Notes under the pieces: model-generated
What the model saw: only the letters and a program-made list of their open reading frames with translations
Database searches by the model: none
Told to the model about the DNA's origin: nothing
Translations under genes and position numbers: made by a program
IMG/VR virus record: IMGVR_UViG_3300042892_005961
Coordinates: 147,169-211,168 of that record
Strand: one strand, 5' to 3'
Length of the DNA stretch: 64,000 nt
In this document: positions 1,044 to 52,473 of the stretch, piece after piece
How the letters are laid out: each line of letters begins with the position of its first letter
Position numbering within the stretch: the stretch's first letter is position 1

Positions 1044-2354
1044 TTAATCACAAGGACAAGTTACGTTTGTAAATGATGAGAAGTATATTGCTGATGGATA
1101 GTTTGTTGCCATATAAGCACTATCTTTATTCGTGTCTATTCTTGAACAACATTCACTATTTATCGTCACAAAACTTAAATTACCCGCACTATAATCTACA
1201 TAATATATTGCTGTTAAATCACATCTCTCATACACATCATATGTTTGCGGTGTAGGAGTTGGTGGTAAAGGGGTTGAAGTTGGTGGTGCTCCTGAACAAG
1301 CTGTACAAGCTGTTTGTGCTGTTCCTGTTTGTGCCGAACCATCTCTCATAAATTCTCTTTCATCAGTACCATCAGAAACCCAAAATGTAGTGTTATTAGT
1401 CATATCACCATACACGCTACCATACATTGTGGAAGATAAACCTTTTACTTTTGTTAAATTACATAAAGACGTACCTACAACCGTAATATTAACATTACTA
1501 TATTCACCACCAGTACATGCTGTTGGTCCGTTAACTAAACTAACATAACCACTAAACGTAGTTTCAAATGGAGTTGGTTGTGGTGTTGCAGTTGCCGGTA
1601 AAGGAGTTGGTGTTGTAGGACAACTACAAGGCGTTGATCCATAAGATATATCCGTAATACTTGCACCAACTGCGAATAATGAACCATTTTGAATACAATC
1701 ATTTATTACTTGTGGTCCAATACCAAATGTTAAATCAATTGTCTCACCGCAACAATCAATATATCTAATATCACCTCCCGTATCAACCTCAAATTGTACA
1801 GATGTTACACAATTAGGTGTTGGGGTTGGGGTTACAGTTGCCGGTAATGGGGTTACAGTTGCCGGTAATGGTGTTACAGTTGCTGGTAATGGGGTTACTG
1901 TTGCCGGTAATGGGGTTACAGTTGCTGGTAATGGGGTTACTGTTGGTGTATTTGTGGGAGTTGCCGTTGGTACAACTGTTGGTGTGGGAGTTGGTGTGGG
2001 AGTTGGTGTGGGAGTTGGTGTAGTCGGCATTCTTATAGTTAAATTATTATAATCAACACATTCCACACATATAACAGAGTCATCATCTTTTCCATTAAAA
2101 TTTGATGGTATCACTCTAATTGTTTTTATTCCCTCGGGAACAACTACATATGTACCATTTAAACTTGATCTTGGAATATTGGAATATCCAACTAAAGGAA
2201 AATATTTTGACGAGTCAGATCCTGAAAGGGATCCTGTACATAAGGATCCAGAATTGTTGGTACAATCCTCTAAACTTCCCGTACAGGCATACAAATCAAC
2301 ATTTAATATTGATACTCCTAAAGTAAATCCTGTTAATCGTATTGTATATGACAT
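1044..2354 (-). CDS. Pro/Thr-repeat, Cys-rich modular protein (putative fibre or decoration)
   Basis: 436 aa; PTPTPT and (TVTPLPA)x5 linkers separate Cys-containing modules, two of which are shared with 10508..12640. Confidence 0.7.
   Translation of the reverse strand: MSYTIRLTGFTLGVSILNVDLYACTGSLEDCTNNSGSLCTGSLSGSDSSKYFPLVGYSNIPRSSLNGTYVVVPEGIKTIRVIPSNFNGKDDDSVICVECVDYNNLTIRMPTTPTPTPTPTPTPTPTVVPTATPTNTPTVTPLPATVTPLPATVTPLPATVTPLPATVTPLPATVTPTPTPNCVTSVQFEVDTGGDIRYIDCCGETIDLTFGIGPQVINDCIQNGSLFAVGASITDISYGSTPCSCPTTPTPLPATATPQPTPFETTFSGYVSLVNGPTACTGGEYSNVNITVVGTSLCNLTKVKGLSSTMYGSVYGDMTNNTTFWVSDGTDEREFMRDGSAQTGTAQTACTACSGAPPTSTPLPPTPTPQTYDVYERCDLTAIYYVDYSAGNLSFVTINSECCSRIDTNKDSAYMATNYPSAIYFSSFTNVTCPCD
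1318..1412. repeat. 95-nt exact duplicate, copy 1 (copy 2 at 10866..10960)
   Basis: Manual alignment shows identity from gctgttcctgtttgtgccg to catatcaccata. Confidence 0.9.
1829..1944. repeat. 21-nt tandem repeat, about 5 copies, encoding TVTPLPA
   Basis: ggggttacagttgccggtaat-like units visible directly. Confidence 0.9.
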
Positions 2355-2389
2355 ATTTCTATAAATAGTATTATATAGAATTTAAACAA

Positions 2390-2415
2390 AAAACCCCTTA
2401 AAATAAAGGGGTTTT
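2390..2415 (-). terminator. Intrinsic terminator (possibly bidirectional)
   Basis: AAAACCCCTT-6 nt-AAGGGGTTTT hairpin followed by a T-rich tract on the minus strand, downstream of 2438..3004. Confidence 0.8.
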
Positions 2416-2437
2416 AATATTGTTTTGTTTTTAAATT

Positions 2438-3004
2438 TTATGTTGAGCAAACATTAATGTCCGTTACAAATCCACTTGCTGAAATTTGTCCTGTATATGT
2501 TGCAAATCCACTGTCGGTTCTATAATAAGCGTGATATTCATCCTCTCCACCATAACCACTTGTTAAACCAGCATCAGTAAAGAATTGTTCTACATTGGCT
2601 GCATTATTTGTTGCGGCAAATACTTCAGTTAAGAGACTTTGAGGTTCTCCACCACCACCAGTAATAGCAGCACAAGCCTGTCCAATATTCGATTGTGTAA
2701 CTGATGGTCCTAATTGATATGAATATGATGTTACTACAGGTGTTGGACTCGGAGTAGGTGTTGGGGTTGCTGCTGCCGGTGTCGCCAGCCACGGGGTTGT
2801 AGTTGTACAAGTACCTGTACTTGCAATTGTTCCCCCTGTTATAGCATCATTAATACCGGTAATTGTATGACCTGCTGTTAATTGGGCTTTTGTAATACCA
2901 GAGGCTAATTCTGATACAACGTTAGCATTTGTTGTTCCTGAAATATTAAACGGACCCGCTGCAGTTCCTGAGGATTCCGATTTTAATGTAAATGTTACTG
3001 TCAT
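2438..3004 (-). CDS. Small two-domain PT-linked protein (putative virion decoration)
   Basis: 188 aa; C-terminal YQLGPS..AC..VEQFFTD..EYH module is homologous to the C-terminus of 3047..8098; TATTTATA upstream at 3021..3028. Confidence 0.7.
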   Translation of the reverse strand: MTVTFTLKSESSGTAAGPFNISGTTNANVVSELASGITKAQLTAGHTITGINDAITGGTIASTGTCTTTTPWLATPAAATPTPTPSPTPVVTSYSYQLGPSVTQSNIGQACAAITGGGGEPQSLLTEVFAATNNAANVEQFFTDAGLTSGYGGEDEYHAYYRTDSGFATYTGQISASGFVTDINVCST

Positions 3005-3046
3005 ATTATTTGTTTCTTTTTATAAATATCTGTTTATTTTGTTTTA

Positions 3047-6000
3047 TTAAGGTTGTTCAGCACAAACACTTTTGTCCGATACCTGACCAGTATATGAAAT
3101 TCTTCCTGAATATGGTGATCCTCCACTATTTAAAGCGAATGAGTGATATTCATTTTCACCGGTATATACGTTTACTAAATTAGGATCTGTAAAGAATTGT
3201 TCTACATTAAATGGTTGATCTGCCGCCGCATATGCTAGAATATAGAAATCCTGACCGTAATTTTGACAAGCCAAACTCGATGATGTATAAGATGGTCCTA
3301 ATTGATAAGCATACGATGTTGCAGGTACAGGTGTGTCTGTAGGTACCGGTGTTGCCGTTGGTGGGAATGGTGTTGGTGTTGGTGATTCTGTTGGTACGTT
3401 TGTTGGTACTGCTGTTGGTACGTTTGTTGGTACTGCTGTTGGTATTGCTGTTGGTACGTTTGTTGGTACGTTTGTTGGTACGTTTGTTGGTACGTTAGTT
3501 GGTACTGCTGTTGGTACGTTAGTTGGTACTGGTGTTGGTGTTGGTCCACAATATGTACAATCACTTGATATGTTACAAGTATTACCACATTCAACATCAG
3601 TTAATAAACCTGAATTAATAATTGGAGCTGTTCCACCTTGTAGACAATGCTGTCTACTTGTACCAGGTAATAAATTAATTGATTGTTCAGTTCCATTACA
3701 ATTTGTTATTGTATAGTTTCCTGTTGTTCCACCTTCATTATAAATTGTCCAACATATACAAGGTAATGGTGTCGAAGTTGGTATTGCTGTTGGTACGTTT
3801 GTAGGTACTGCTGTTGGTACGTTTGTTGGTACTGCTGTTGGTATTGCTGTTGGTACGTTTGTTGGTACGTTTGTTGGTACGTTAGTTGGTATGTTAGTTG
3901 GTATGTTAGTTGGTATATTGGTTGGTTCTGGTGTATTAGTTGGGACCGCCGTTGGTACGTTAGTTGGTATGTTGGTTGGTATGTTGGTTGGTATATTGGT
4001 TGGTACTGCTGTCGGTACTGCTGTTGGTACGTTAGTTGGTAATGGTGTTGGTGTGCTGTAGATAACATCAACATCAACATTAAAGTTACAATCTGGCGTT
4101 GGAGTTGGAGTTGGTGTTGTAGTGTTAGTAGGTGTTGGGGTTGGTGTATTTGTCGCTGGTAATGGCGTAGGAGTTGGTGTATTTGTTGCGGATTCCGGTA
4201 ATGGTGTTGGAGTATTTGTATTTGTTGGTGTAGGAGTTGGTGTACTATAGATAACATCAACATCAACATTAAAGTTACAATCTGGTGTTGGAGTTGCGGT
4301 ATTTGTTGGTGTTGGAGTTGGGGTATTTGTTGGTGTTGGAGTTGGGGTATTAGTTGCTAATTCTGGTGTATTTGTATTTGTTGGTGTTGGGGTTGGTGTT
4401 GGTGTACCATATATAATGTCCACATTTATTTCAAAATCACAATTTGGTGTAGAAGTTGGTGTACTAGTTGGTGTTGGAGTATTTGTATTTGTTGGTGTAG
4501 GAGTTGGTGTACTATATACAACTAAAACATCAACATTAAAGTTACAATCTGGTGTTGGTGTAGGTGTTGCAGTGTTAGTAGGTGTTGGAGTTGGGGTACT
4601 ATAAAATATTTCTACGTCAACAGCAAACTCACAATTTGGTGTGGCTGTTGGGGTTGGTGTTGGGGTTGGTGTACTAGTAACAACTAAAACATCAACTAAG
4701 AAATTACAATTTGGTGTAGGTGATGGAGTAGGTGTTGGTGTACTAGTAACAACTAAAACATCAACATTAAAATTACAATCTGGTGTTGGGGTTGGTGTTG
4801 GGGTTGGTGTACTAGTAACAACTAAAACATCAACATTAAAATTACAATCTGGTGTTGGGGTTGGTGTTGGTGTATTTGTTGCAGGTGATGCCGTTACTGT
4901 TGGTGTTGGGGTGGAAGGTAATGGTGTTGCAGTTGCTGGTAATGGTGTAGCTGTTGGTGTGGCTGTTGGTGTTGGTGTGTTTGTTGGAGTTGGTGTTGGT
5001 CCTGGCTCATATATCGCTAATCCTCCACTAAATCTACAATCTTTCACATCATTTTGACCAATTGATACATATCCATAATCTAAATAATTATTTACTGTAC
5101 AATCATTTGGACCGTATTTGTAAGATGTGAATTTAATTTTTTCACGTCCTTCATTATCTATGAAAAATTCATATGATATTATTTTTTGTTTTGTTGTTCC
5201 TGTAATCGATGAATTACCAATTTCGGTTCCGTATTGTGTGTTTTTACCTTCTCCATCTATAGTTGATCCAGAATAGGTGTTAATATATGTAATTGTATTT
5301 TGTATCGCCCTTTTCCACAGTATTTTTAATTGTTGGTCTATTTCACTATAAACCGAAAGGTTATTAGTTGTACCTCCACTATATAATTTAACACTAATAC
5401 CATTAGTTGTAACGGTATTATCGTTATTAAATGTTAATGTTGTTCCAGTTAATGAAGTTGCTCCACTGATTAAAACATATGTACATCCTGTAACATTTGT
5501 TGTTGTGTTTAATGCAGAAGCATTTTCAGGGTCAGTCATACCTGAATAAACTATACCGTCAATTTCAAATATTGGATAAAGTTTAACATAACCATCGTGT
5601 TTTGTTTCCCCATCTTCATCAATTTCAATAGAAAAACCAAGATCATCGTCAGCCTGTTGTATTAAATAATCAAAATAACTTGTAAATCCTGTTGGTATTT
5701 CTAAATCAAAATTAATGTGGTCTTCCGTTTCTGTAGGTTGACATCCATATCTATATTGATATTTTGATCTACCAAAAATATTATTTGAAATTAAATTACC
5801 TCCCGTCCATAAAGTTGTTGCAGGAATAATTTGATCGATAACACTTGTCCAATAAGGACTCATTTTTTCAATAAACAAATTAATGTCAGGAAATGTGTAT
5901 GCTTTGTTAGGTGAAAAATCTCTAGTAATATAATCTTGATAGATGTCCTCTAATGTAATATAATTCTTCTTATATTTTATTAAATTAGAATTTTTAATTT

Positions 6001-8098
6001 GTTGATGTATCATTAAATCGACATACTCAGCGAATGTTACTCCTGTTTGTGGTGTTAAACTATTTGTACCGAATGTTGTACCTGTTGGACCAAAGTCTCT
6101 AGATTTACGATATATGTCATAATCAACCGCTTGTGCTGATGATAAATAAACTTCAATATTTTTTCTATTTAATAATAAACCAGAATTATCATTAAGATTT
6201 TCTGTTTGATTATTATCAATAATATTTTTTAATTTATATCCTGAGTCTAATCCTGGCAATTTTCTATAAACGTCAAAATAATCTTCACCATAGGTATATG
6301 CACTATTTTTAGTAACAATATTTTTAGTTCTTCCTGTTACCGTTGAATTATCGATATCAATCACTAATGGTGATTTATGATCTGTAGTATTATCATACCA
6401 ACCAGATCCTTTTTGGAAAAAATATTCTGTTGATCCCGTAATTCCTTTAGGTAATAACGTATCTCCATTAACGGGATAATTTTCAGAATTAAATGTTGTT
6501 GTACCTGTAGTTATACCAGTATAATATCTATATGGAAGATATGTTACACCATTAATAGTTCCACCTGTTGGTAAGAATATTCCTGTTTTGTAAGTTTTAG
6601 TTCCCGATATAACATCATAAATGTCACCTTTTAAATCAAATGATTTAGGTAAAGATATTACCTTGTAAACATATTGATTAATTTTAATCATTGGTTCAGG
6701 AGCACCTAAAAATCTTAAAAAAAATTCTAAAGATTGTCTTGTACCTTTTGATTTATAAATGTAAGCCAAGTTAACTAACAACCTTCGATAAAATTCATAT
6801 TCGGCGTCTATTAAAGACGTTCCCGATACTAATCCAGAATATTGTTGTGATGTCTTAGTGTATAATAATTCATCTAAACCTTTCTCATCAATTAAGTTAA
6901 TTGTATCTAACCCTAAAGTATTTGCCAAGTTTTTTAACAATACATCGGGTACGTTATTAATACCGTCATAACTTACATTTCTCATGTAAGCAATATTATC
7001 AATATATTTTTTTACACTATCAAAACTTTGTCCATATAATTGAAATAATGATTCGGCCTTTTTATCGGGACTATCAAATTCAAACAATTGAGGTGATGTT
7101 AAAAACCTAACAAATAAGTTAGACTTATAATCATCAATTTCATCTGCTATATTACTTAAATTTGTTAAATAACTATCATATTCTAAACCTGTAATTTTAA
7201 TGTTCCAATCTTCCTTATCGGATAACGGCCAACTATAATTTACTGAAATTAATTCGGTTTTTGTTTCGTCAAAACTATCTCTTGGTACCTTAAAACTTGA
7301 AGTATATTTTGGAAAAGTGTCTCTGTTTAATAAACTTTCCTCTAAATCATCTAAACCTTTAAAGAACTCTTCAACAACACCATCATTTGGTTTAATTAAT
7401 ATATTTTCAGAAAACCCCGTTAAGTTATCAAATGGTTTACCACTTACCTTTAATGAAATTATATTATCACTATTAGGTTCAATATATGAAATTACATCAT
7501 ATGTTTTTCCACTTATTGAAATTAAATAGTTTTTAAAAGAAGTATAAAAATCTCTGTTTTTATTAATTGAAGGTAATATGGTATTACTTTTCGGTGTAAC
7601 CATAACAATCGAAAATGGATTGTATAGTTTACTGTACTCAACTTTAAATTGAGTGGTGTTACTTATATTATCATATGTAATATTATTAGCGGTAAAATTC
7701 GTTACTTTAATTAAACTATTAGAATCAATTAAAATAGCCGCAGGAAAATTATTAATTATATTAGTTGTCGCAACACCTAGTCTACTTTTTAATGATCCAA
7801 ATAAAGATTTAGCAGCATCATTTTTAGAACCTTTAAATTTTATTTCTTTATTTTTACTTGTAGTACCACTCGTAGTTGTACTTGAAGTTTGTCCTTTTAA
7901 ATCATCTAATGTTAAAAAATTAGAAAACGGATTTGTTTTAAAATTCTTTGTATCTCTTTGTATTACCTCACTATCTAACGCAAAGTTCGTATTAGTCAAT
8001 TGACCGGTACCCGTGGTAATTTGATTACCGACTAGATTGTCACTGAATGTATCGGCACCACTCGCAGCTTGACTTGGAATTTTACGTAATTTTGCCAT
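3047..8098 (-). CDS. Large baseplate-wedge-like protein (T4 gp7/P2 gpI-like motif) with long Pro/Thr repeat C-terminal extension
   Basis: 1683 aa; [20 protein letters not shown] resembles the YKxKGT motif of gp7/gpI-type wedge proteins; about the last 640 aa are PT repeats plus Cys modules. Confidence 0.6.
3389..4040. repeat. Two blocks of 12-nt tandem repeats encoding PTN(V/I)/PTA(V/I) (about 3389..3530 and 3779..4040)
   Basis: gttggtacgttt / gttggtactgct / gttggtatgtta units read directly. Confidence 0.9.
4055..4853 (-). repeat. Eight dispersed copies of (D/N)C(N/E/D)FxVDVxVx(T/Y)S peptide separated by PT linkers
   Basis: Counted in the translation of 3047..8098; DNA unit acatcaacattaaa(a/g)ttacaatctgg recurs. 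Confidence 0.9.
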
Positions 8099-43488: not shown

Positions 43489-43977
43489 TTAGTATATTAA
43501 AATACATCTATCCATTCTCAAAGAACATGTAATATTAGCTAATTCATCTCTGTTATAGTCTAATTCACCAAAGTTCAAGTCAGTTAAAAAACAGTTTTCT
43601 AATAACCATTTTTCAACTACTACTCCTGTTGGGTCTAACATCTCCAATTCAATATCCTTTTTATAACCTGCAGCATAACCCATACGACCTGTTACAGATT
43701 CAGCATGTAAACGGAACCATTCCATTAAAGCTTGAGAAGCTGAAGGTCCAATTGGATCTCTAAAAGTCATTTTAATTTCATTCCACTCAAATCTACCTGC
43801 AACATATGTTGATGTGTTCAGGAAAGGAATTGCAACTGAATTGATTTTAGCACTTGGTCTTGACGCGGCAGATACATACCATTCGTTTATACCCAAAGAT
43901 GAGTTGAATCTTACGATAAATCGGTTGACCCTTTTCGGTTCGTAAGGTGTCGGCATTTTCATTAATAAATCGGCCAT
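43489..43977 (-). CDS. Tail tube protein (T4 gp19-like)
   Basis: 162 aa; EPKRVNRF, FRDPI, YKKDIELEMLDPTG, W.L.NCF..D.NFG.LDY. Confidence 0.9.
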   Translation of the reverse strand: MADLLMKMPTPYEPKRVNRFIVRFNSSLGINEWYVSAASRPSAKINSVAIPFLNTSTYVAGRFEWNEIKMTFRDPIGPSASQALMEWFRLHAESVTGRMGYAAGYKKDIELEMLDPTGVVVEKWLLENCFLTDLNFGELDYNRDELANITCSLRMDRCILIY

Positions 43978-44057
43978 ATTGTGTGTTTGTTAAGTTTTGT
44001 TAGTTATTTACTTTCTAATAAATATATCCAAAAGGAAAATAATTTTATTTTGAATTA

Positions 44058-44085
44058 ATTATCTCAAAAAGGTTGTTTATGTCAA
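44058..44085 (-). promoter_or_regulatory. Sigma70-like promoter upstream of tail tube
   Basis: TTGACA-N16-GATAAT on the minus strand; the TATTTATT motif also occurs at 44017..44024. Confidence 0.35.
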
Positions 44086-44114
44086 TTATTTTTCGTAGTT
44101 TTTTACAGGCCCCA

Positions 44115-44190
44115 GTATCTAGTTCCAGTTTAATACTCTACTTTAATAAATAATATATCATTAATAAATACTAGTGTATCTAGTTCCAGT
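44115..44190. repeat. 15-bp direct repeat GTATCTAGTTCCAGT x2 (44115..44129, 44176..44190)
   Basis: Exact copies 61 bp apart in an AT-rich intergenic region. Confidence 0.9.
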
Positions 44191-44228
44191 ATTCTGGGTA
44201 AAGTATAATTATTTTTTTGTTATACATA

Positions 44229-44244
44229 TGTTCCACGTGGAGCA
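44229..44244. promoter_or_regulatory. parS-like palindrome TGTTCCACGTGGAGCA
   Basis: 15/16 match to the palindromic parS variant TGTTCCACGTGGAACA; intergenic. Confidence 0.6.
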
Positions 44245-44246
44245 TT

Positions 44247-44274
44247 AAAAAAGGGCACCATTTCTGATACCCTT
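44247..44274 (-). terminator. Intrinsic terminator after sheath gene
   Basis: AAGGGTATCA-GAAA-TGGTGCCCTT (two G-U pairs, GNRA loop) then TTTT. Confidence 0.85.
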
Positions 44275-44298
44275 CTTATTTTTATATCTCCTTTTAGA

Positions 44299-47283
44299 TT
44301 AGATATTTTCAAATGAAGCTCCTGTTGGTGTAATAATGAATTCCACATCGATATATTCAAGAGAACGAGTTGGTTTAATGTAAATCTTACCTCTCATTGT
44401 GTTTGCGTCGATATCCTCAGGATCGTTAGAAACTGTTACACGGAAGTCATACAAACCTCTTTCTTTCTTAATTGCGTCCAAGATAGGGTTTACCAATCTT
44501 AAGAATTCATTTCTTACTTGGTCATCGTTTTGTTCAAACAATAATCTTACAGAAACTGCAGAAATTAACTTTCTTGCTCTTAATAACAATCTTCTTACGT
44601 TGATTCTATCTAAAGCGGATTCTCTAACTTGTAACGTTTTGTTACCCCAAATAATAGTACCTGTATCAGAGAATGTAGCGATTGGGTTAATTCTGTTCTT
44701 ATATAATACGTCTCTATCATCTAAAGTCAATTTTTTAGTTGCTTTGATCGCATTTACTAAACCTCTACTATAACCCGCAACCGCGAACCAAGGATAAGAC
44801 ACGTTGTCAGTTAAGGCAATGTTCTTTACAACCTCACCTGTTGGTGGGATATATAATTGAGTTGCATTATCTGTATCTCTTACTTGAATCCAAGGCCAAT
44901 ATGTTGCAGAATAGTTAGAATCTATACCCGCGTCATCTAAAGCAGATACAATAGAATCTGTTGCAGTTGCCCCTGTGATATTTGGTGAGTTCATAATATA
45001 TAATGAATCAGCTCTTTCAGTTTCAATCATATCAATCGCTTGATTAACTAATGAACTATGATCTTGGAAGTTAATACCAGGTGTTGCAAATACGTTAATA
45101 TCTACAGCTTCAGGATTTGAATACGTCTCAATACCTTGTAAGTAAGCGTAATAGTCAGAATTACCTACTGAATCACTAAACACTCCTCCGGGGGTTGTAT
45201 GTCCTAACTTATAGATAGATTTACCAAAAATATAACGATCGTCGTTAGTTCTTATTGATCTATATATATCCCAACCATCCCTACCTCCATAAACTGCAAA
45301 AGTGAATTTACGGAAATTAATATTAGTTAATTTATTATTACCATTATTATTAAGCTCATCTTGACCTTCTAAATCATATGGTGTTGTTTGGAAAGTTGTT
45401 GTTCCAGTAATTGTGGAGGCGTTTACAGACAAATGGAAACCAAATGTTTCTGTTGTTGCCATCTCACCTTTATATTTTAATAAATCTCTATCGAATCCAA
45501 CAGCGTCAGATAAACCTAACATAACTTTTCTTACCTTATCTCCACCTTCAATATTAGGTGAACCATTCACATCGTAAGTTTCAACATCACCCGCATCGTT
45601 ATATTTTGTTTTGAATATTACATTACCTAATCCCATATTAATTCCTGATACAGTACCAAAGTTTTTGTTGTTTGCAAAACCTCTAAAACCAGCAGGAATA
45701 GCATCTACAGGTGCTCCGTCCGCCATAACCAACATAATTCTTTTAGAAACTAACGCGTATTCACCATCAGATGTACCGATTTTCTTACCTATATAACCTG
45801 GAGTATCTGGATTCATAGAACATCTTGAATATTTTTCAAGAGCTACTTGATTCTCATCAGTATCGTTAAAATCACGAACCACTAAATCAAACTCCATAGT
45901 TTCTAAATTAATATTTTGAATATTGATTTTTACTTCAAAGTTAGCAGCCTCTCCGTCGGAGATTGTAATAACTTGAAATAAATCAGCAACATTACCACCA
46001 CGAACTTCAGAAACAACCATCGGTGAAATTGTTGTATCCCATGGTTTTAAGTAATTATATGAATTAGAATCTTCTTCTGATTCATATGAAACGTCCATAG
46101 AAATACCTCTTACTAATCCTCTTTCAAAGGCGGTTCCTAAATAATTAGGATATGATTCATGTACATATACCGGATAGTCACCTTTATCTTTATCAAATAC
46201 ATCAGTTCCTAAAACTTTAGAAATATATTTTGATGATGATCGATTTAATGAACAAACAAATTGTTTAACTCCACTTGTCGTACCTGTTACGTTGATTGAA
46301 AACTCACCCATTGGGTTTGTATTCATATCAGATCCCGTAACACCTGATAATATGAATTTATTATCATCCTTAACTTCATGTATTAATGTTTGTCCGCTAT
46401 ATATACCTCTTGATCTTATTGCTGCAACCACTACATTATGGTATTCATCGGCTAAAAGTGCTTCCCAATCAAATTGAGTAATTGACCATTTGTTAGTTGA
46501 ATTTGTAAATGTGAATAAATAAGAATAAATACCATTTACACCGTCACCGTCTGGAGGAGTGACCAAACCATCAGATTGGTGATGCATTGTATTCCACCAT
46601 TCTTTTGTATTATTACTATTACTATATTTTTCTCCAGATAATGGAGATACTAATTCTGTACCATTTCCAACAATTGCACTATCTTCTGTTCCTTCCGTAT
46701 TTCTTCCTATCCAAAAATATTCATTAGTTGATCCGGTAGTTGAACCTTCATAATCACCGTAATTATCTTTTAAATATGTTACAATATCAGTACCATCAAC
46801 AGATGTTACACCTGACAAATGAGCAATAATTTCATTTAATGAATTTATTGAAGATCCGGTTTCTGTTGTTGTAATTCCTGTTGTTGTAATTGTTACACTA
46901 CCAACTTCATTAGTTACGCCAGAATACCCTTCTAAAATTACACCACCTACGGTTTTAATACCGAATGTTTTATATGGTCTATAACCTGTAAGACCCAATA
47001 CTCTCGTTACGAATAATTGATTAGATTCTTGTAAATATGATTTTGCAACATATCCTAATTCATATTTTGGATTACCGTCACTGAACTTTTCAGGTGAAGT
47101 AGATCCAAAATACAATTTGAATTCGTCAAAATTTGAAATTAAAATAGGTTCGAAAGCTGGACCTTTTAAAGTCTCACCAGCTAAACCTAATGTTGTAACA
47201 CCTACACTCTGTGCTACAAATGTTAAATCGAGCTCGGATGTATAGACACCTGGAGACACGAAAACTCTGTTATTACTTGCCAT
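44299..47283 (-). CDS. Tail sheath protein
   Basis: 994 aa; FVSPGVYTSELD N-terminus; YWPWIQ, PWFAVAGYSRG, LYKNRINPIA, WGNKTLQ, LDRINVRRLL, IKPTRSLEYI. Confidence 0.95.
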   Translation of the reverse strand: MASNNRVFVSPGVYTSELDLTFVAQSVGVTTLGLAGETLKGPAFEPILISNFDEFKLYFGSTSPEKFSDGNPKYELGYVAKSYLQESNQLFVTRVLGLTGYRPYKTFGIKTVGGVILEGYSGVTNEVGSVTITTTGITTTETGSSINSLNEIIAHLSGVTSVDGTDIVTYLKDNYGDYEGSTTGSTNEYFWIGRNTEGTEDSAIVGNGTELVSPLSGEKYSNSNNTKEWWNTMHHQSDGLVTPPDGDGVNGIYSYLFTFTNSTNKWSITQFDWEALLADEYHNVVVAAIRSRGIYSGQTLIHEVKDDNKFILSGVTGSDMNTNPMGEFSINVTGTTSGVKQFVCSLNRSSSKYISKVLGTDVFDKDKGDYPVYVHESYPNYLGTAFERGLVRGISMDVSYESEEDSNSYNYLKPWDTTISPMVVSEVRGGNVADLFQVITISDGEAANFEVKINIQNINLETMEFDLVVRDFNDTDENQVALEKYSRCSMNPDTPGYIGKKIGTSDGEYALVSKRIMLVMADGAPVDAIPAGFRGFANNKNFGTVSGINMGLGNVIFKTKYNDAGDVETYDVNGSPNIEGGDKVRKVMLGLSDAVGFDRDLLKYKGEMATTETFGFHLSVNASTITGTTTFQTTPYDLEGQDELNNNGNNKLTNINFRKFTFAVYGGRDGWDIYRSIRTNDDRYIFGKSIYKLGHTTPGGVFSDSVGNSDYYAYLQGIETYSNPEAVDINVFATPGINFQDHSSLVNQAIDMIETERADSLYIMNSPNITGATATDSIVSALDDAGIDSNYSATYWPWIQVRDTDNATQLYIPPTGEVVKNIALTDNVSYPWFAVAGYSRGLVNAIKATKKLTLDDRDVLYKNRINPIATFSDTGTIIWGNKTLQVRESALDRINVRRLLLRARKLISAVSVRLLFEQNDDQVRNEFLRLVNPILDAIKKERGLYDFRVTVSNDPEDIDANTMRGKIYIKPTRSLEYIDVEFIITPTGASFENI

Positions 47284-47316: not shown

Positions 47317-47395
47317 ATCTTATAAATATCTTTGTTTTTATCAAAGATTTCCCAACTTTTCTTAAAAAGATAGTTATTTATCTTTTAATATCTTT
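47317..47395. promoter_or_regulatory. Divergent promoter region with ATCTTT/AAAGAT operator-like array
   Basis: Inverted repeats ATCTTTG-7-CAAAGAT (47328..47348) and AAAAGATA-6-TATCTTTT (47365..47386); TATTTATA (minus, 47321..47328) and TATTTATC (plus, 47375..47382). Confidence 0.55.
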
Positions 47396-49384: not shown

Positions 49385-51136
49385 ATGGAAAAGAAAATAC
49401 CTGAGGTTGAAGCAAGGGAAATATTAAATGAATATGACGGATCTAATAATGTTTTATTAGAATACAAACGTAAATTTGTGGAAGTTAAAAACTTTAAATT
49501 AACTCGTCCACAGTCGGAATACGTTATCAAATATAAAGACACCTCCCCTAAAGTTGCTCGTAAACACATCAATATCGTTTCCACATTTGGTGAGAAATTA
49601 ATGGAAGAAATGTTATTACCATTACCACCCGAAAAAGTGTGGTGTGAAAAATTGTTATGTGAATCCGATAAAGCATTTCATATTTGGGGTAAAGTAATTG
49701 ATAGTCAACAAAACCACGCAATGTGGTTACCTAAGTCTGCAATTGTTCAAGAAGAAAAAAAGTTAAATCGTGTAATTGATTATAGTCCGTATGATAATCG
49801 TCCCCCTATGGAACACCAGAAGGTCGCCATAGAGAAATTATTAGCAAACAATAAGTTTATATTAGCTGATGATATGGGTCTCGGAAAAACGACAGCAGCG
49901 GTTATTGCGTCAATGGAAAGTGGTGCGAAGAAAGTTTTAATTGTTTGTCCCGCATCCCTTAAAATAAATTGGGATAGAGAGATTAAAAATTATACAGATA
50001 GGAAAGTTTTAATTGTTGAAGGTCGTAAATGGGGGTCTACTTTTGATTACTACATTATCAATTATGATATATTAAAGAATTATCACACCACAGAAAAAAG
50101 TGAAGATAGTGATGACTATAAATTATTAGTAAATGAAAAGTTTGATTTAGCAATTGTGGATGAAGCACATTACGTTAGTAATAGTACAGCAAACAGAACT
50201 CGTTTATTAAATGACGTATTGGAAACCATACCACGAGTTTGGTTATTAACAGGAACCCCAATGACATCGAGACCAATTAACTATTTTAATTTATTAAAGA
50301 TTGTTGACTCACCTTTAACATTAAATTGGCAATCATACGTTCGTCGTTATTGTAAAGGTTATCAATTCACGGTTGGAAATAGAAAAGTGTGGAACACAAG
50401 TGGGGCAAGTAATTTAGATGAATTAAGAGAAAGAACTAAATCATATGTTCTTCGTAGAATGAAAACTGACATTTTAGATTTACCTGAAAAAATTGTTACA
50501 CCTGTATTTGTAGAATTAAGTAGTAAAATGTATGATGAGGAGTTAGAAGAGTTTACAAGAATTAGTAATGACAATAAAGATAAAGAAACATTAAGTGTAA
50601 CATTAAATCGTTTAATGAAAATTAGACAACTTATTGCTTACGAAAAAATTCCATATACTTGCGAGATTATAGATAAATGTTTAGACCAAGGAAAAAAAGT
50701 AATCGTATTCACCAACTTTACAATGTCATTGGATATGTTACATGAAAAATACAAAAAGAACTCTGTAATATTAAATGGTAGTATGTCTAAAGAAAAGAAA
50801 CAAGAGAGTGTTGATAGATTTCAAAATGAAGATAAAATAAAAATATTTATTTCTAATATCATTGCTGGTGGTGTCGGTATTACATTAACTGCGGGTGAGG
50901 TTGTTGTAATGAATGATTTATCATTTGTACCTGCTCATCATAGTCAAGCGGAAGATAGAGCATATCGTTACGGACAACAGAATAGTGTATTAGTTTATTA
51001 TCCCGTGTTTGAAAATACGGTTGAAAAAATAATATACAATATATTACAAAAGAAAAAGAACGTCATTGACCAAGTTATGGGTGACGGAGAATATTCCGAA
51101 TCGTTCAGTAAAGACCTACTTAAAAGTCTCTTTTAA
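49385..51136 (+). CDS. SNF2/HARP-family helicase
   Basis: 583 aa; ADDMGLGKT, IVCPASL, IVDEAH, LTGTP, QAEDRAYRYGQ. Confidence 0.9.
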   Translation: MEKKIPEVEAREILNEYDGSNNVLLEYKRKFVEVKNFKLTRPQSEYVIKYKDTSPKVARKHINIVSTFGEKLMEEMLLPLPPEKVWCEKLLCESDKAFHIWGKVIDSQQNHAMWLPKSAIVQEEKKLNRVIDYSPYDNRPPMEHQKVAIEKLLANNKFILADDMGLGKTTAAVIASMESGAKKVLIVCPASLKINWDREIKNYTDRKVLIVEGRKWGSTFDYYIINYDILKNYHTTEKSEDSDDYKLLVNEKFDLAIVDEAHYVSNSTANRTRLLNDVLETIPRVWLLTGTPMTSRPINYFNLLKIVDSPLTLNWQSYVRRYCKGYQFTVGNRKVWNTSGASNLDELRERTKSYVLRRMKTDILDLPEKIVTPVFVELSSKMYDEELEEFTRISNDNKDKETLSVTLNRLMKIRQLIAYEKIPYTCEIIDKCLDQGKKVIVFTNFTMSLDMLHEKYKKNSVILNGSMSKEKKQESVDRFQNEDKIKIFISNIIAGGVGITLTAGEVVVMNDLSFVPAHHSQAEDRAYRYGQQNSVLVYYPVFENTVEKIIYNILQKKKNVIDQVMGDGEYSESFSKDLLKSLF

Positions 51137-51319
51137 TTCTTTAATTTTATCAGTTAATAACTGATCTAACTCCTTATCTTCAATATCAGGAATATTAACT
51201 ATGATGGTTTTAGGGTCTAAAGTATAGTCTATAAAGTTAGTTTCCCCCTCTTTTTGTAAGTGGAATACAAAATCGTTAATCCCACAGATACTGAATAATT
51301 CGTTTAGTTTCTCGTTCAT
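51116..51319 (-). CDS. Hypothetical protein
   Basis: 67 aa; fills the gap between two plus-strand genes with plausible composition. Confidence 0.55.
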   Translation of the reverse strand: MNEKLNELFSICGINDFVFHLQKEGETNFIDYTLDPKTIIVNIPDIEDKELDQLLTDKIKELKETFK

Positions 51320-51334
51320 AATAGAAATATAAGA

Positions 51335-51342
51335 TATTTATA
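51335..51342 (+). promoter_or_regulatory. TATTTATA motif on plus strand
   Basis: 15 nt upstream of the plus-strand neck gene; motif orientation flips with gene orientation. Confidence 0.65.
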
Positions 51343-51357
51343 AGAATAAATCAAATT

Positions 51358-52473
51358 ATGTCTCAAATTATTTCACAAGCGGAAAAGGATAAATTATATA
51401 CTCAGGTCTTTCATCTATTAGGTATGCCAGTTCGTGGTATTGAACTTACCGAAGAACAAATGGATACCTTCATGGAATTGGCTTTATCTGAATACGAACA
51501 ATACGTTAGTGATTGGTTGATTGAATCTCAGTGGTCGGCACTTGCGGGATTAGATATAGATACACAATCATTATCAAGAGCTTTTACAACAAGAAGTTTA
51601 GATTACGAAACACAATATACTCACTCATACTCCAAAATTGTAGGTTTACAATCTGGTGGTGATTGGGAACTAAAAAAGGATTATTTTACACTTTCAGGAG
51701 AAACTCAAGTTTATGAAATTCCCGCTGGCCGTGAAGTAAATGAATTATTATGGTTTGCTCGTGCTGAATTAAGTGATTCATTTGTTGATCCGTTTATGGC
51801 GGGATTTGGTGGTCTTGGTGGATTAGGTTTCGGTGGTGCCGGTGGATTTGCACAAATGGGTAATGCTGGATCTTACTTTATGACTCCCGCATTTGACTTA
51901 TTATTAAGAATGCAAGATAGAAGTATTAAAAATAGACTAATTGGTGGTGATTTAACTTATAGAATAACTGCAGGTCCTGAAGGTAAAAAATTAGTTCATT
52001 TATATAATGTACCGGGTGGTAAATTTGATTTTGGTTCAATAAAACAAAAAAATTATAATGTTTGGTATTGGTATTATGATACTATGGATAGAGATTCATG
52101 TCTTAAAGATAATAAAGACGTAATTAAATTACCATCTGATGTTGATACTGAACAATTGGTATGGGAAAACTTAAATAAACCAGCTCAAAACTGGGTTAGA
52201 AAGTATTTGATTGCCTATTCTAAAGAAGGTTTAGGTCGTATTTGGGGTAAATTCTCAGGTGATTTACAAGTTCCTGATAGTCAAGTTAAGTTAGATTATC
52301 AATCTTTAATTACGGAAGGTAAAGATGAGAAATCTAAATTAGTTGAAGAACTTATGGCTAGATTAGAAAGACTCCGCCCCGACAAACTTCTTGAAAGAAA
52401 AGGTGCCGAAGCGGAGAATCTTAATAAGGCACTTAAGTTTAGAGCAATGCCTTCATCTATTATTGTAATCTAA
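51358..52473 (+). CDS. Neck / head-tail adaptor protein (gp13-like)
   Basis: 371 aa; LGMPVRGIELTEEQM, WVRKYLIA..KEGLGRIWGKF, EGKDEKSKLVEEL. Confidence 0.8.
   Translation: MSQIISQAEKDKLYTQVFHLLGMPVRGIELTEEQMDTFMELALSEYEQYVSDWLIESQWSALAGLDIDTQSLSRAFTTRSLDYETQYTHSYSKIVGLQSGGDWELKKDYFTLSGETQVYEIPAGREVNELLWFARAELSDSFVDPFMAGFGGLGGLGFGGAGGFAQMGNAGSYFMTPAFDLLLRMQDRSIKNRLIGGDLTYRITAGPEGKKLVHLYNVPGGKFDFGSIKQKNYNVWYWYYDTMDRDSCLKDNKDVIKLPSDVDTEQLVWENLNKPAQNWVRKYLIAYSKEGLGRIWGKFSGDLQVPDSQVKLDYQSLITEGKDEKSKLVEELMARLERLRPDKLLERKGAEAENLNKALKFRAMPSSIIVI

What the first reader, a model, noticed from the sequence alone, without database searches (positions are those of the whole stretch)
44040..44250. parS-like centromere plus direct repeats in the sheath-tube intergenic region
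Seen: the largest intergenic gap in the window (about 320 bp) holds TGTTCCACGTGGAGCA (44229..44244) just past the sheath terminator, two exact 15-bp repeats (GTATCTAGTTCCAGT), a CCAG-TATT-CTGG mini-palindrome and AT-rich tracts. Known: bacterial parS sites are 16-bp palindromes (TGTTTCACGTGAAACA and the TGTTCCACGTGGAACA variant), bound by ParB, origin-proximal, and load SMC. A one-mismatch hit in 64 kb is expected about 1e-3 times under uniform composition. Inference: the phage recruits host (or its own) ParB to position or segregate its genome, and this locus may be its replication origin.
Basis: partly seen in the sequence, partly recalled or inferred. Interest (0 to 1): 0.75.

Follow-up and report, generated by a model that had tools for sequence, protein, structure and literature searches.

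The report
Host-type parS in jumbo phage
A family of lake jumbo phages that probably infects Flavobacteriaceae keeps one copy of exactly the 16-base site those bacteria use to segregate their chromosome, between its tail sheath and tail tube genes, so the phage probably gets the host ParB protein to load onto its own DNA.

Summary
TGTTCCACGTGGAGCA (44229-44244) is the only parS-like site in the 75-kb contig and lies just after the sheath terminator. The window is about a quarter of a ~300-kb jumbo phage. In two samples of relatives (about 140 spacers, some contigs in both) almost all keep the palindrome at this position. Many have the perfect TGTTCCACGTGGAACA, which is single-copy in four genomes of 171-311 kb.

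The probable host is a Bacteroidota, likely Flavobacteriaceae. The evidence is no Shine-Dalgarno signal, TAnnTTTG promoters, and a related contig binned in a Flavobacteriaceae MAG. The exact 16-mer is that family's chromosomal parS: it occurs in 80 of 121 genomes, often as pairs that flank mnmG where checked. Canonical ParB was found in 5 of 5 genomes tested. No phage ParA or ParB was found.

Best reading: a hijacked loading site for host ParB. ParB binding itself is untested, and the benefit to the phage is inferred.

The 15-bp repeats belong to a separate conserved array of ACTRG/CTAG motifs, unique in the genome, followed by two unique boxes and a late promoter. Their function is unassigned. 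GC skew does not support an origin here, but an origin is not excluded.

phi29's host-type parS sites are the closest precedent.

The parts
44299..47283 (-). Tail sheath gene (994 aa)
   Evidence: phrog_23 tail sheath E = 5e-61; Pfam Phage_sheath_1 and Phage_sheath_1C.
44247..44277 (-). Rho-independent terminator of the sheath gene (13-bp stem, 4-nt loop, T-run)
   Evidence: Folds at -16.5 kcal/mol, z = -4.98. The G.U pairs are valid only on the gene strand. In relatives the hairpin sequence differs but stays paired, always followed by a T-run.
44229..44244 (.). parS-like 16-bp palindrome TGTTCCACGTGGAGCA, one mismatch to the host-family parS TGTTCCACGTGGAACA
   Evidence: Unique in the 75-kb contig. 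Conserved at the same position in relatives. Perfect and single-copy in G001-G004. The exact 16-mer occurs in 80 of 121 genomes of the probable host family.
44203..44225 (.). Inverted repeat GTATAA-N11-TTATAC
   Evidence: Read directly from the sequence. The TATAA...TTATA arms are conserved in the spacer alignment. Function unassigned.
44186..44197 (.). Palindrome CCAGTATTCTGG (CCAGTATACTGG in many relatives)
   Evidence: Unique in the contig at up to 2 mismatches. Conserved in relatives, including those without parS.
44176..44190 (-). 15-bp direct repeat, copy far from the tube gene (gene strand ACTGGAACTAGATAC); part of the ACTRG/CYAGT array
   Evidence: The spacer holds 7 ACTRG/CYAGT motifs in 150 bp against a contig mean of 0.18.
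44132..44170 (.). AT-rich core (39 bp, 90% A+T) between the two repeat clusters
44115..44129 (-). 15-bp direct repeat, copy near the tube gene
44091..44106 (-). Conserved box GTAAAAAACTACGAAA
   Evidence: Second most conserved 16-column block of the spacer. Unique in G000; its AAAAACTACGAAA core is unique in G001. Function unknown.
44073..44085 (-). TTGACATAAACAA (palindrome TTGAT-AAA-ATCAA in relatives); also forms the -35 half of a sigma-70-like match at 44058-44085
   Evidence: The -10 half is not conserved, and the inferred host phylum does not use this promoter type.
44011..44025 (-). Probable phage late promoter ATATTTATTAGAAAG, 34-48 nt upstream of the tube ATG
   Evidence: Most conserved block of the spacer. 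ATATTTATAA-type motifs recur upstream of the sheath gene and other structural genes. ATATTTAT and TATTTATA are the most enriched upstream 8-mers in G001.
43489..43977 (-). Tail tube gene (162 aa)
   Evidence: phrog_4542 tail tube E = 4e-28; Pfam Phage_T4_gp19.

Best explanation
The 16-bp palindrome is a working copy of the host chromosome's centromere, parS. It is carried once per genome by a clade of roughly 300-kb lake jumbo phages that probably infect Flavobacteriaceae.

It sits in a gap between the sheath terminator and the tube late promoter that is probably not transcribed. Proposed mechanism (inferred): host ParB dimers recognise the site, bind CTP, close into clamps and spread over the neighbouring phage DNA. 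This makes the phage genome a substrate for the host ParA and SMC machinery. The most likely benefit is that unintegrated phage genomes are positioned or partitioned in cells that keep dividing (carrier state or pseudolysogeny). Draining ParB away from the host chromosome is an alternative benefit.

The phage supplies no ParA or ParB of its own.

The window's own copy has one mismatch (T to C at position 3 on the gene strand) and is probably a somewhat weaker site.

The 15-bp direct repeats are not part of parS. They belong to a separate conserved array of ACTRG/CTAG motifs around an AT-rich core, unique in the genome. Two unique boxes and the tube late promoter follow. Together these form a roughly 270-bp module upstream of the tube gene, most likely bound by a phage-encoded protein.

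Shown: sequence identity with the host-family parS, conservation, uniqueness, and the absence of detectable phage ParA/ParB.
Inferred: ParB binding, spreading, and the benefit to the phage.
For: 1. Conservation. In 75 sheath-tube spacers (74 relatives plus the window; tube protein 85-100% identical), 73 have the palindrome within 3 mismatches of the perfect parS and 11 are perfect. In a second sample drawn by a different conserved box, 64 of 67 relatives (tube 78-100% identical) have it. Some contigs occur in both samples. The block's mean column identity is 0.83 against 0.61 for the whole spacer.
2. Uniqueness. There is exactly one site within 2 mismatches in each of four relatives of 171-311 kb. 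In each it is a perfect 16/16 match; in G001 it lies in the sheath-tube spacer (checked directly), and in the other three the coordinates fall in the sheath-tube loci and their spacers carry the perfect site.
3. Host inference. Upstream of 309 ORFs of the complete relative G001 there is no Shine-Dalgarno enrichment, and TATATTTG/TATCTTTG (the Bacteroidota -7 box TAnnTTTG) is enriched. A related 248-kb contig sits in a Flavobacteriaceae MAG.
4. Match to the host parS. That MAG has two perfect copies flanking mnmG on a bacterial contig. The exact 16-mer is present in 80 of 121 genomes of that family, 1-3 copies each and often in pairs about 1.9 kb apart, with zero hits for the reversed-pattern control. 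Elsewhere in the phylum the T/A variant predominates among the matches listed.
5. A host partner exists. Canonical ParB (TIGR00180, 165-176 bits) was found in 5 of 5 family genomes tested.
6. No phage partner. No ParB_N, HTH_ParB, TIGR00180 or ParA (AAA_31) hit passes its cut-off in G000-G004, including the complete 310-kb genome.
7. Variant spectrum. Variants in relatives (GGAACC end, CACGAG or CACATG core, CGTT start) are of the same kinds as natural P. aeruginosa parS sites that ParB binds in vitro (PMC4368675).
8. A given perfect 16-bp palindrome equals one specified sequence with probability 1 in 65,536 (my calculation).
9. Precedent. Virulent phage phi29 carries host-type parS sites and exploits host Spo0J (PMC2731898).
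Against: - No binding data of any kind exist.
- The host is inferred, not known.
- The window's own site has a mismatch, and many relatives carry 2-3 mismatches, including in the CACGTG core that the P. aeruginosa study found important for affinity.
- A few relatives have lost the site (L043, L077, L102, L237, L239, L242), so it is dispensable.
- The site stays at a fixed 247-316 nt upstream of the tube ATG even when genes are inserted in the spacer. That also fits a role as an operator of the tube gene.
- No lysogeny or plasmid-maintenance genes are shared by the clade. One tyrosine recombinase occurs only in G001.
- The advantage of ParB loading for a lytic jumbo phage is speculative.
Confidence: 0.6

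Rival explanations
1. The spacer is a replication origin of the phage. The ACTRG/CTAG repeats would act as iterons on both sides of a 39-bp AT-rich unwinding element next to a promoter, with parS placed origin-proximal as in bacteria. This could coexist with the parS reading.
For: The motif array is the single densest cluster in a 310-kb genome: 10 per 150 bp against a mean of 0.16, with the next-best window at 3. The array flanks a 90% A+T core. All elements of the module are unique in the genome. T4-type origins are known to combine a promoter with an unwinding element (established knowledge).
Against: Cumulative GC skew shows no extremum or switch at the locus in the window or in the complete relative G001, where it follows gene strand; the site is at 59 kb, with extremes near 4 kb and 235 kb. 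Both flanking genes are structural, and no initiator gene is adjacent. Skew is a weak test for phages that replicate by recombination. Read-depth profiling could not be run.
Confidence: 0.2
2. The palindrome is the operator of a phage-encoded regulator that is not a ParB and that controls the tube late promoter. Its identity with parS would then be coincidental.
For: The site keeps a fixed distance of 247-316 nt to the tube ATG even when genes are inserted between sheath and tube. It is embedded in a module of other unique conserved boxes.
Against: The chance that an arbitrary perfect 16-bp palindrome equals the host family's parS is about 1 in 65,536. The CC/GG variant is kept in a 30-32% G+C genome and matches the probable host family rather than the variant common elsewhere in the phylum. 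Relatives without the palindrome keep the rest of the module and the promoter, so the tube promoter does not need it.
Confidence: 0.12
3. The palindrome acts as an RNA hairpin, for example a second terminator stem or an RNase processing site in read-through sheath-tube transcripts.
For: Two symmetric double changes keep the arms complementary: GTTCT..AGAAC in L018 and GTTTC..GAAAC in L032. Several changes fall in what would be the 4-nt loop.
Against: The gene-strand hairpin is weak, -4.1 kcal/mol, z = -2. It lies after the terminator's T-run and has no T-run of its own. Single-arm changes break pairing on either strand: 12 of 55 distinct spacers give a C.A mismatch on the gene strand, and about 8 give one on the opposite strand. 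So neither strand's RNA is consistently paired. In four lake metatranscriptomes the 100-nt bin holding the palindrome has little or no RNA-contig depth and the central spacer 44115-44215 has none; these data show presence only, not absence.
Confidence: 0.05
4. The site is a chance match or a neutral remnant with no function.
For: The window's copy is imperfect, and a few relatives have lost the site.
Against: The expected number of such matches is about 1e-3 per window. The site is conserved well above the rest of the spacer across about 140 spacers in the two samples.
Confidence: 0.03

Closest known systems
Host-type parS sites of Bacillus phage phi29, bound by host Spo0J (PMC2731898 and the work it cites)
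   Same: A phage without its own ParB carries sites that match the host chromosomal parS, so that the host partition protein acts on the phage genome.
   Different: phi29 is a 19-kb podovirus with five sites, and their role is to trap the phage genome in the host's spore. Here there is a single site in a roughly 300-kb myovirus, between the sheath and tube genes. The inferred host phylum does not sporulate, so the biological purpose must differ.
Chromosomal parS/ParB (Spo0J) centromeres, e.g. P. aeruginosa TGTTCCACGTGGAACA (PMC4368675)
   Same: Identical 16-bp sequence in many relatives and one mismatch in the window. One to a few sites per replicon. Located in intergenic DNA.
   Different: The site is on a phage genome, with no demonstrated origin nearby and no cognate ParAB on the same replicon.
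Partition cassettes of plasmid-prophages (P1 parABS, N15 sopABC)
   Same: A centromere on a phage genome. In N15 the centromere sites are scattered, including in the late-gene region (my recollection, not checked here).
   Different: Those phages encode their own ParA and ParB and use their own centromere sequence. Neither protein was found here, and the sequence is the host's.
SGI1 carrying a parS that hijacks the IncC helper plasmid's ParAB (PMC10954446)
   Same: A mobile element keeps only the cis-acting site and relies on another replicon's partition proteins.
   Different: That element is an integrative mobilizable element exploiting a plasmid system, not a phage exploiting the chromosomal system.

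Membership tests
Chromosomal-type parS (ParB/Spo0J binding site) | 16-bp palindrome matching TGTTNCACGTGNAACA | tested here: met
   The window's site has 1 mismatch. The match is perfect 16/16 in G001-G004 and other relatives.
Chromosomal-type parS (ParB/Spo0J binding site) | Specific binding and CTP-dependent loading of ParB | not testable with these tools
   Needs EMSA, ChIP or clamp-loading assays with ParB from a Flavobacteriaceae host.
Chromosomal-type parS (ParB/Spo0J binding site) | A cognate ParB is present in the same cell | tested here: inconclusive
   Canonical ParB was found in 5 of 5 genomes of the inferred host family, and the same 16-mer is their chromosomal parS. But the host is inferred, not demonstrated.
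Chromosomal-type parS (ParB/Spo0J binding site) | Located close to the replication origin | tested here: inconclusive
   No GC-skew feature at the locus. The phage's origin or origins are unknown.
phi29-type exploitation of host ParB by a phage | Host-type parS on a phage genome that encodes no ParB | tested here: met
   No ParB_N, HTH_ParB or TIGR00180 hit above cut-off in G000-G004.
phi29-type exploitation of host ParB by a phage | Several sites per genome, used for spore entrapment in a sporulating host | tested here: not met
   One site per genome. The inferred host phylum, Bacteroidota, does not form endospores (established knowledge).
Plasmid-prophage partition cassette (P1 or N15 type) | Phage-encoded ParA and ParB, as in P1 parABS and N15 sopABC | tested here: not met
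   No AAA_31 ParA and no ParB in the complete 310-kb relative or the others. The flanking genes are sheath and tube.
Iteron-type replication origin | Repeated short motifs flanking an AT-rich unwinding element | tested here: inconclusive
   An ACTRG/CYAGT array (7-10 per 150 bp) lies around a core of 90% A+T. There is no initiator gene, no skew switch, and spacing between the repeats varies from 45 to 68 bp among relatives.
Rho-independent terminator (the element just upstream of the palindrome) | G+C-rich hairpin followed by a T-run, kept paired by compensatory changes | tested here: met
   -16.5 kcal/mol, z = -5. Relatives have different stem sequences that stay paired.

The most novel reading that the evidence does not exclude
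A whole clade of uncultured lake jumbo phages has captured the exact centromere of its Flavobacteriaceae hosts and keeps it under selection. Host ParB-CTP clamps, and through them ParA and SMC, would then act on a lytic-type phage genome that encodes no partition proteins. This may be one case of a wider, undescribed habit. The exact 16-mer occurs in more than 120 IMG/VR contigs of many G+C contents. It is mostly found without a ParB gene, about half the time outside ORFs, and about three times more often than random positions directly after a terminator.
Probability: 0.4. Interest if true: 0.8.

Novelty: new variant of a known kind. Interest (0 to 1): 0.68.

Why it matters
If host ParB really loads on these phage genomes, this would extend a trick known from phi29 in sporulating Bacillus. 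The new setting is abundant freshwater jumbo phages of a non-sporulating phylum.

It would point to an unrecognised phase of the infection in which the phage genome must be positioned, partitioned or compacted by host machinery, such as a carrier state or pseudolysogeny. Alternatively, it would point to a way of draining ParB from the host chromosome.

It also gives a cheap sequence-based host predictor: the phage's parS variant matches the host family's variant. And it offers a directly testable system using the ParB of cultured Flavobacterium strains.

The neighbouring unique CTAG-motif array is a second well-defined cis element with no known binding partner.

Tried and rejected
- DNA search of the INPHARED phage collection with the sheath-tube region: no match. 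By tube protein the nearest cultured phages are only 33-41% identical.
- Rfam scan of the spacer: only sub-threshold hits that look like terminators.
- The sigma-70-like promoter TTGACA-N16-GATAAT (11 of 12 matches) was set aside. Its -10 half is not conserved, and the inferred Bacteroidota host uses TAnnTTTG promoters.
- Phage-encoded ParB: the only lead was a 251-aa ORF in G002 and G003 at 15-17 bits. It carries a DGQHR motif, weakly resembles GmrSD_N (below Pfam's cut-off), and is absent from the complete genome G001. It is not a canonical ParB.
- Half-parS heptamers: GTTCCAC occurs 19 times against 5.6 expected in G000, but the copies are scattered through coding sequence (possibly a coding bias; not tested). 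There is no enrichment in G001.
- RNA evidence: contigs from four lake metatranscriptomes cover both flanking genes, and none covers 44115-44215. One 151-nt contig reaches 44113, upstream of the proposed late promoter. Contig data show presence only, so transcript ends could not be mapped.
- Cultured distant relatives (Flavobacterium phage immuto, Microcystis phage Mel-JY01) have sheath-tube spacers of 45-94 bp and no parS anywhere. The module is therefore specific to this uncultured clade.

Full report
**What is in the window.** The window is bases 11239-75238 of a single 75,240-bp virus contig with 31.6% G+C. CheckV rates the contig 24% complete. Nearly all genes are on the minus strand.
- The finding lies in the 321-bp spacer 43978-44298, between the tail sheath gene (44299-47283, minus strand) and the tail tube gene (43489-43977, minus strand). 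Both are confirmed by PHROGs and Pfam.
- It is the largest ORF-free gap in the window.
- The palindrome is the only site within three mismatches of parS in the whole contig. From base composition I expect about 3e-4 to 1.4e-3 such sites within one mismatch per window.

**Layout on the gene strand.** In order:
1. Sheath stop codon.
2. A strong rho-independent terminator at 44247-44277 (-16.5 kcal/mol, z = -5). Its G.U pairs work only on the gene strand.
3. The palindrome, two bases after the T-run.
4. An inverted repeat GTATAA-N11-TTATAC.
5. CCAGAATACTGG, overlapping the first 15-mer.
6. The AT-rich core.
7. The second 15-mer.
8. The box GTAAAAAACTACGAAA.
9. TTGACATAAACAA.
10. ATATATTTATTAGAAAG, 34-48 nt before the tube ATG.

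ATATTTATAA-type motifs recur upstream of the sheath gene and several other structural genes. They are the most enriched upstream 8-mers in a complete relative. I read this motif as the phage's late promoter.

**Relatives.** A tube-protein search of IMG/VR found more than 599 relatives, of which 80 were fetched. Some lie on contigs of 170-311 kb, so this is a jumbo-phage clade. One relative, G001, is 310,542 bp with terminal repeats and is rated 100% complete.
- The sheath-tube spacer is about 290-370 bp in almost all relatives.
- In 75 spacers (74 relatives plus the window), 73 carry the palindrome within three mismatches of TGTTCCACGTGGAACA, and 11 are perfect.
- A second sample, drawn by the unrelated box GTAAAAAACTACGAAA, gave 64 of 67 relatives with it, at tube identities of 78-100%. 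Some contigs occur in both samples.
- The palindrome block is the third most conserved part of the spacer: 0.83 mean column identity against 0.61 overall.
- In each of four relatives of 171-311 kb there is exactly one site within two mismatches, and it is perfect. In G001 it lies in the sheath-tube spacer. In the other three the coordinates fall within the sheath-tube loci, whose spacers carry the perfect site.
- A few relatives lack the palindrome (L043, L077, L102, L237, L239, L242) yet keep the rest of the module.
- Where extra genes are inserted in the spacer (L006, L012, L060, L122), the palindrome stays 247-316 nt upstream of the tube ATG. It therefore belongs with the tube-upstream module rather than with the sheath terminator.

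**DNA site or RNA hairpin.** As gene-strand RNA the palindrome folds weakly (-4.1 kcal/mol). It follows the terminator's T-run and has none of its own. Single-arm transitions occur in both directions. Twelve of 55 distinct spacers would give a C.A mismatch on the gene strand, and about eight would give one on the other strand. Neither RNA is consistently paired. A double-stranded protein-binding site that tolerates changes in one half-site fits better. The variant types seen (GGAACC end, CACGAG or CACATG core, CGTT start) are of the same kinds as natural P. aeruginosa parS sites, which ParB binds with graded affinity (PMC4368675).

**Host and its parS.**
- Upstream of 309 ORFs of G001 there is no Shine-Dalgarno enrichment. 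TATATTTG and TATCTTTG are enriched; these match the Bacteroidota -7 box TAnnTTTG, which is established knowledge.
- A scan of species-representative genomes found a related 248-kb contig (tube 83% identical) inside a MAG titled Flavobacteriaceae bacterium.
- A bacterial contig of that MAG carries two perfect TGTTCCACGTGGAACA copies flanking mnmG/gidA, in the order ybeY, parS, mnmG, parS, methyltransferase.
- In a sample of 121 genomes of that family, 80 hold the exact 16-mer. They have one to three copies, often in pairs about 1.9 kb apart. The reversed-pattern control gave zero hits.
- Five of five family genomes tested encode canonical ParB (TIGR00180, 165-176 bits).
- Across the phylum, 73 of 101 genomes have TGTTYCACGTGRAACA. 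Outside this family the T/A variant predominates among the matches listed.

So the phage's CC/GG variant, kept in a genome of 30-32% G+C, matches the probable host family specifically.

**No phage partition proteins.** ParB_N, HTH_ParB, TIGR00180 and the ParA family AAA_31 give nothing above cut-off in the window's contig or in G001-G004. The only weak hit is a 251-aa protein in G002 and G003 that carries a DGQHR motif and weakly resembles GmrSD_N (below Pfam's cut-off). It is absent from the complete genome G001.

**Interpretation.** The most economical reading is that the palindrome is a functional host-type parS, on which host ParB loads. Virulent phage phi29 is a precedent: it carries five host-type parS sites and exploits Spo0J to get its genome into the spore (PMC2731898). 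SGI1 does the analogous thing with a helper plasmid's ParAB (PMC10954446). Here the host does not sporulate and there is one site per roughly 300 kb, so the purpose must differ. My best guess is positioning or partition of unintegrated genomes in dividing cells. Recruitment of SMC or titration of ParB are alternatives. All of this is inference; nothing here shows binding.

**The repeats.** The two 15-mers are made of ACTRG sub-motifs (ACTGG-A-ACTAG-AT-AC).
- ACTRG/CYAGT motifs are rare in these genomes: 0.16-0.18 per 150 bp. CTAG itself occurs 49 times against 215 expected in the contig.
- The spacer holds 7 of them in 150 bp in the window and 10 in G001. It is the densest cluster in 310 kb; the next-best window has 3.
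- The median is 7 per spacer across 58 distinct relatives.
- The array persists in relatives that lack parS, so it is a separate element.
- The box AAAAACTACGAAA and the TTGAYA-N-TCAA palindrome are also unique in G001.

I cannot assign what binds these elements. An operator array for a phage regulator of the tube promoter, or iterons of an origin, are the candidates.

**Origin claim.** Cumulative GC skew follows gene orientation in the window and in G001. There the site lies at 59 kb and the extremes lie near 4 kb and 235 kb. This does not support an origin at the locus. Skew is a weak test for such phages, and I could not profile read depth.

**Other checks.**
- Lake metatranscriptome contigs cover both flanking genes, and none covers 44115-44215. 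One contig reaches 44113, and such data show presence only.
- Rfam gave only sub-threshold, terminator-like hits.
- Cultured distant relatives (Flavobacterium phage immuto, Microcystis phage Mel-JY01) have 45-94 bp spacers and no parS.

**Verdict.** The parS interpretation is well supported by comparative evidence but is untested biochemically. 'Own ParB' is not supported, and the origin idea is unsupported but not excluded. I file this as a new variant of a known kind: a phage or mobile element that carries only the cis site of someone else's partition system.

Noticed in passing
Only 2 of the 80 fetched belong to this phage family. Of 78 sites, 37 lie outside ORFs of at least 70 aa. Of 30 records searched whole, only 2 encode a ParB_N protein. 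Four records rated complete carry the site without ParB. Host-type parS without a phage ParB may be widespread among phages.
   Followed up: partly
L110:288, L112:5343, L116:1553, L148:6483, L160:8770, L171:11828, L186:820: In unrelated viral contigs the exact parS again sits directly after a terminator-like hairpin plus T-run. This holds for 8 of 81 sites, against 3.2% of random positions in the same loci. One of the eight (L130) looks dubious by eye. The layout is the same as in the window.
   Followed up: partly
G001 (L096, L098, L099; about 248-310 kb of the complete relative): The complete 310-kb relative carries 31 tRNA genes, 28 of them in one 10-kb array, plus a tmRNA (L098:8514-8918).
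   Followed up: no
L006, L012, L060, L122 (sheath-tube spacers): Some relatives have genes inserted between the sheath terminator and the palindrome: a 138-aa ORF (L006, L012), a 213-aa ORF on the opposite strand (L060), and about 1.6 kb in L122. None of these was annotated.
   Followed up: no
window 4663-4812 and 2000-6000: A second cluster of 6 ACTRG/CYAGT motifs lies inside the 1683-aa ORF 3047-8098 (minus strand). This region has higher G+C (0.35-0.37) and a GC skew opposite to the rest of the minus-strand genes.
   Followed up: no
whole contig G000 and G001: CTAG is strongly avoided: 49 observed against 215 expected in G000, and 176 against 849 in G001.
   Followed up: no
G001 upstream regions; window 47319, 51333, 9018, 55429, 3015, 59044: Two promoter-like motif classes occur upstream of genes: ATATTTATAA (about 30 genes in G001, including the structural genes here) and TATATTTG/TATCTTTG, which is Bacteroidota-type. 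There is no Shine-Dalgarno signal.
   Followed up: partly
L082:958-1713 (G002; the same ORF in G003): A 251-aa protein with a DGQHR motif gives weak ParB_N and GmrSD_N-like matches. It is present in two relatives and absent from the complete genome G001.
   Followed up: partly
G001:187797-188246: A 273-aa tyrosine recombinase (Phage_integrase, E = 5e-36) is present in G001 but not detected in G000 or G002-G004.
   Followed up: no
window 49385-52473: A short plus-strand island sits inside the minus-strand structural block. It holds an SNF2-type helicase (583 aa) and a 371-aa protein with a weak head-tail adaptor match.
   Followed up: no
window 47332-47344: TTGATAAAAACAA, two mismatches from the tube-upstream TTGACATAAACAA, lies directly upstream of the sheath gene's ATATTTATAAG motif. 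Sheath and tube may share a regulator.
   Followed up: no
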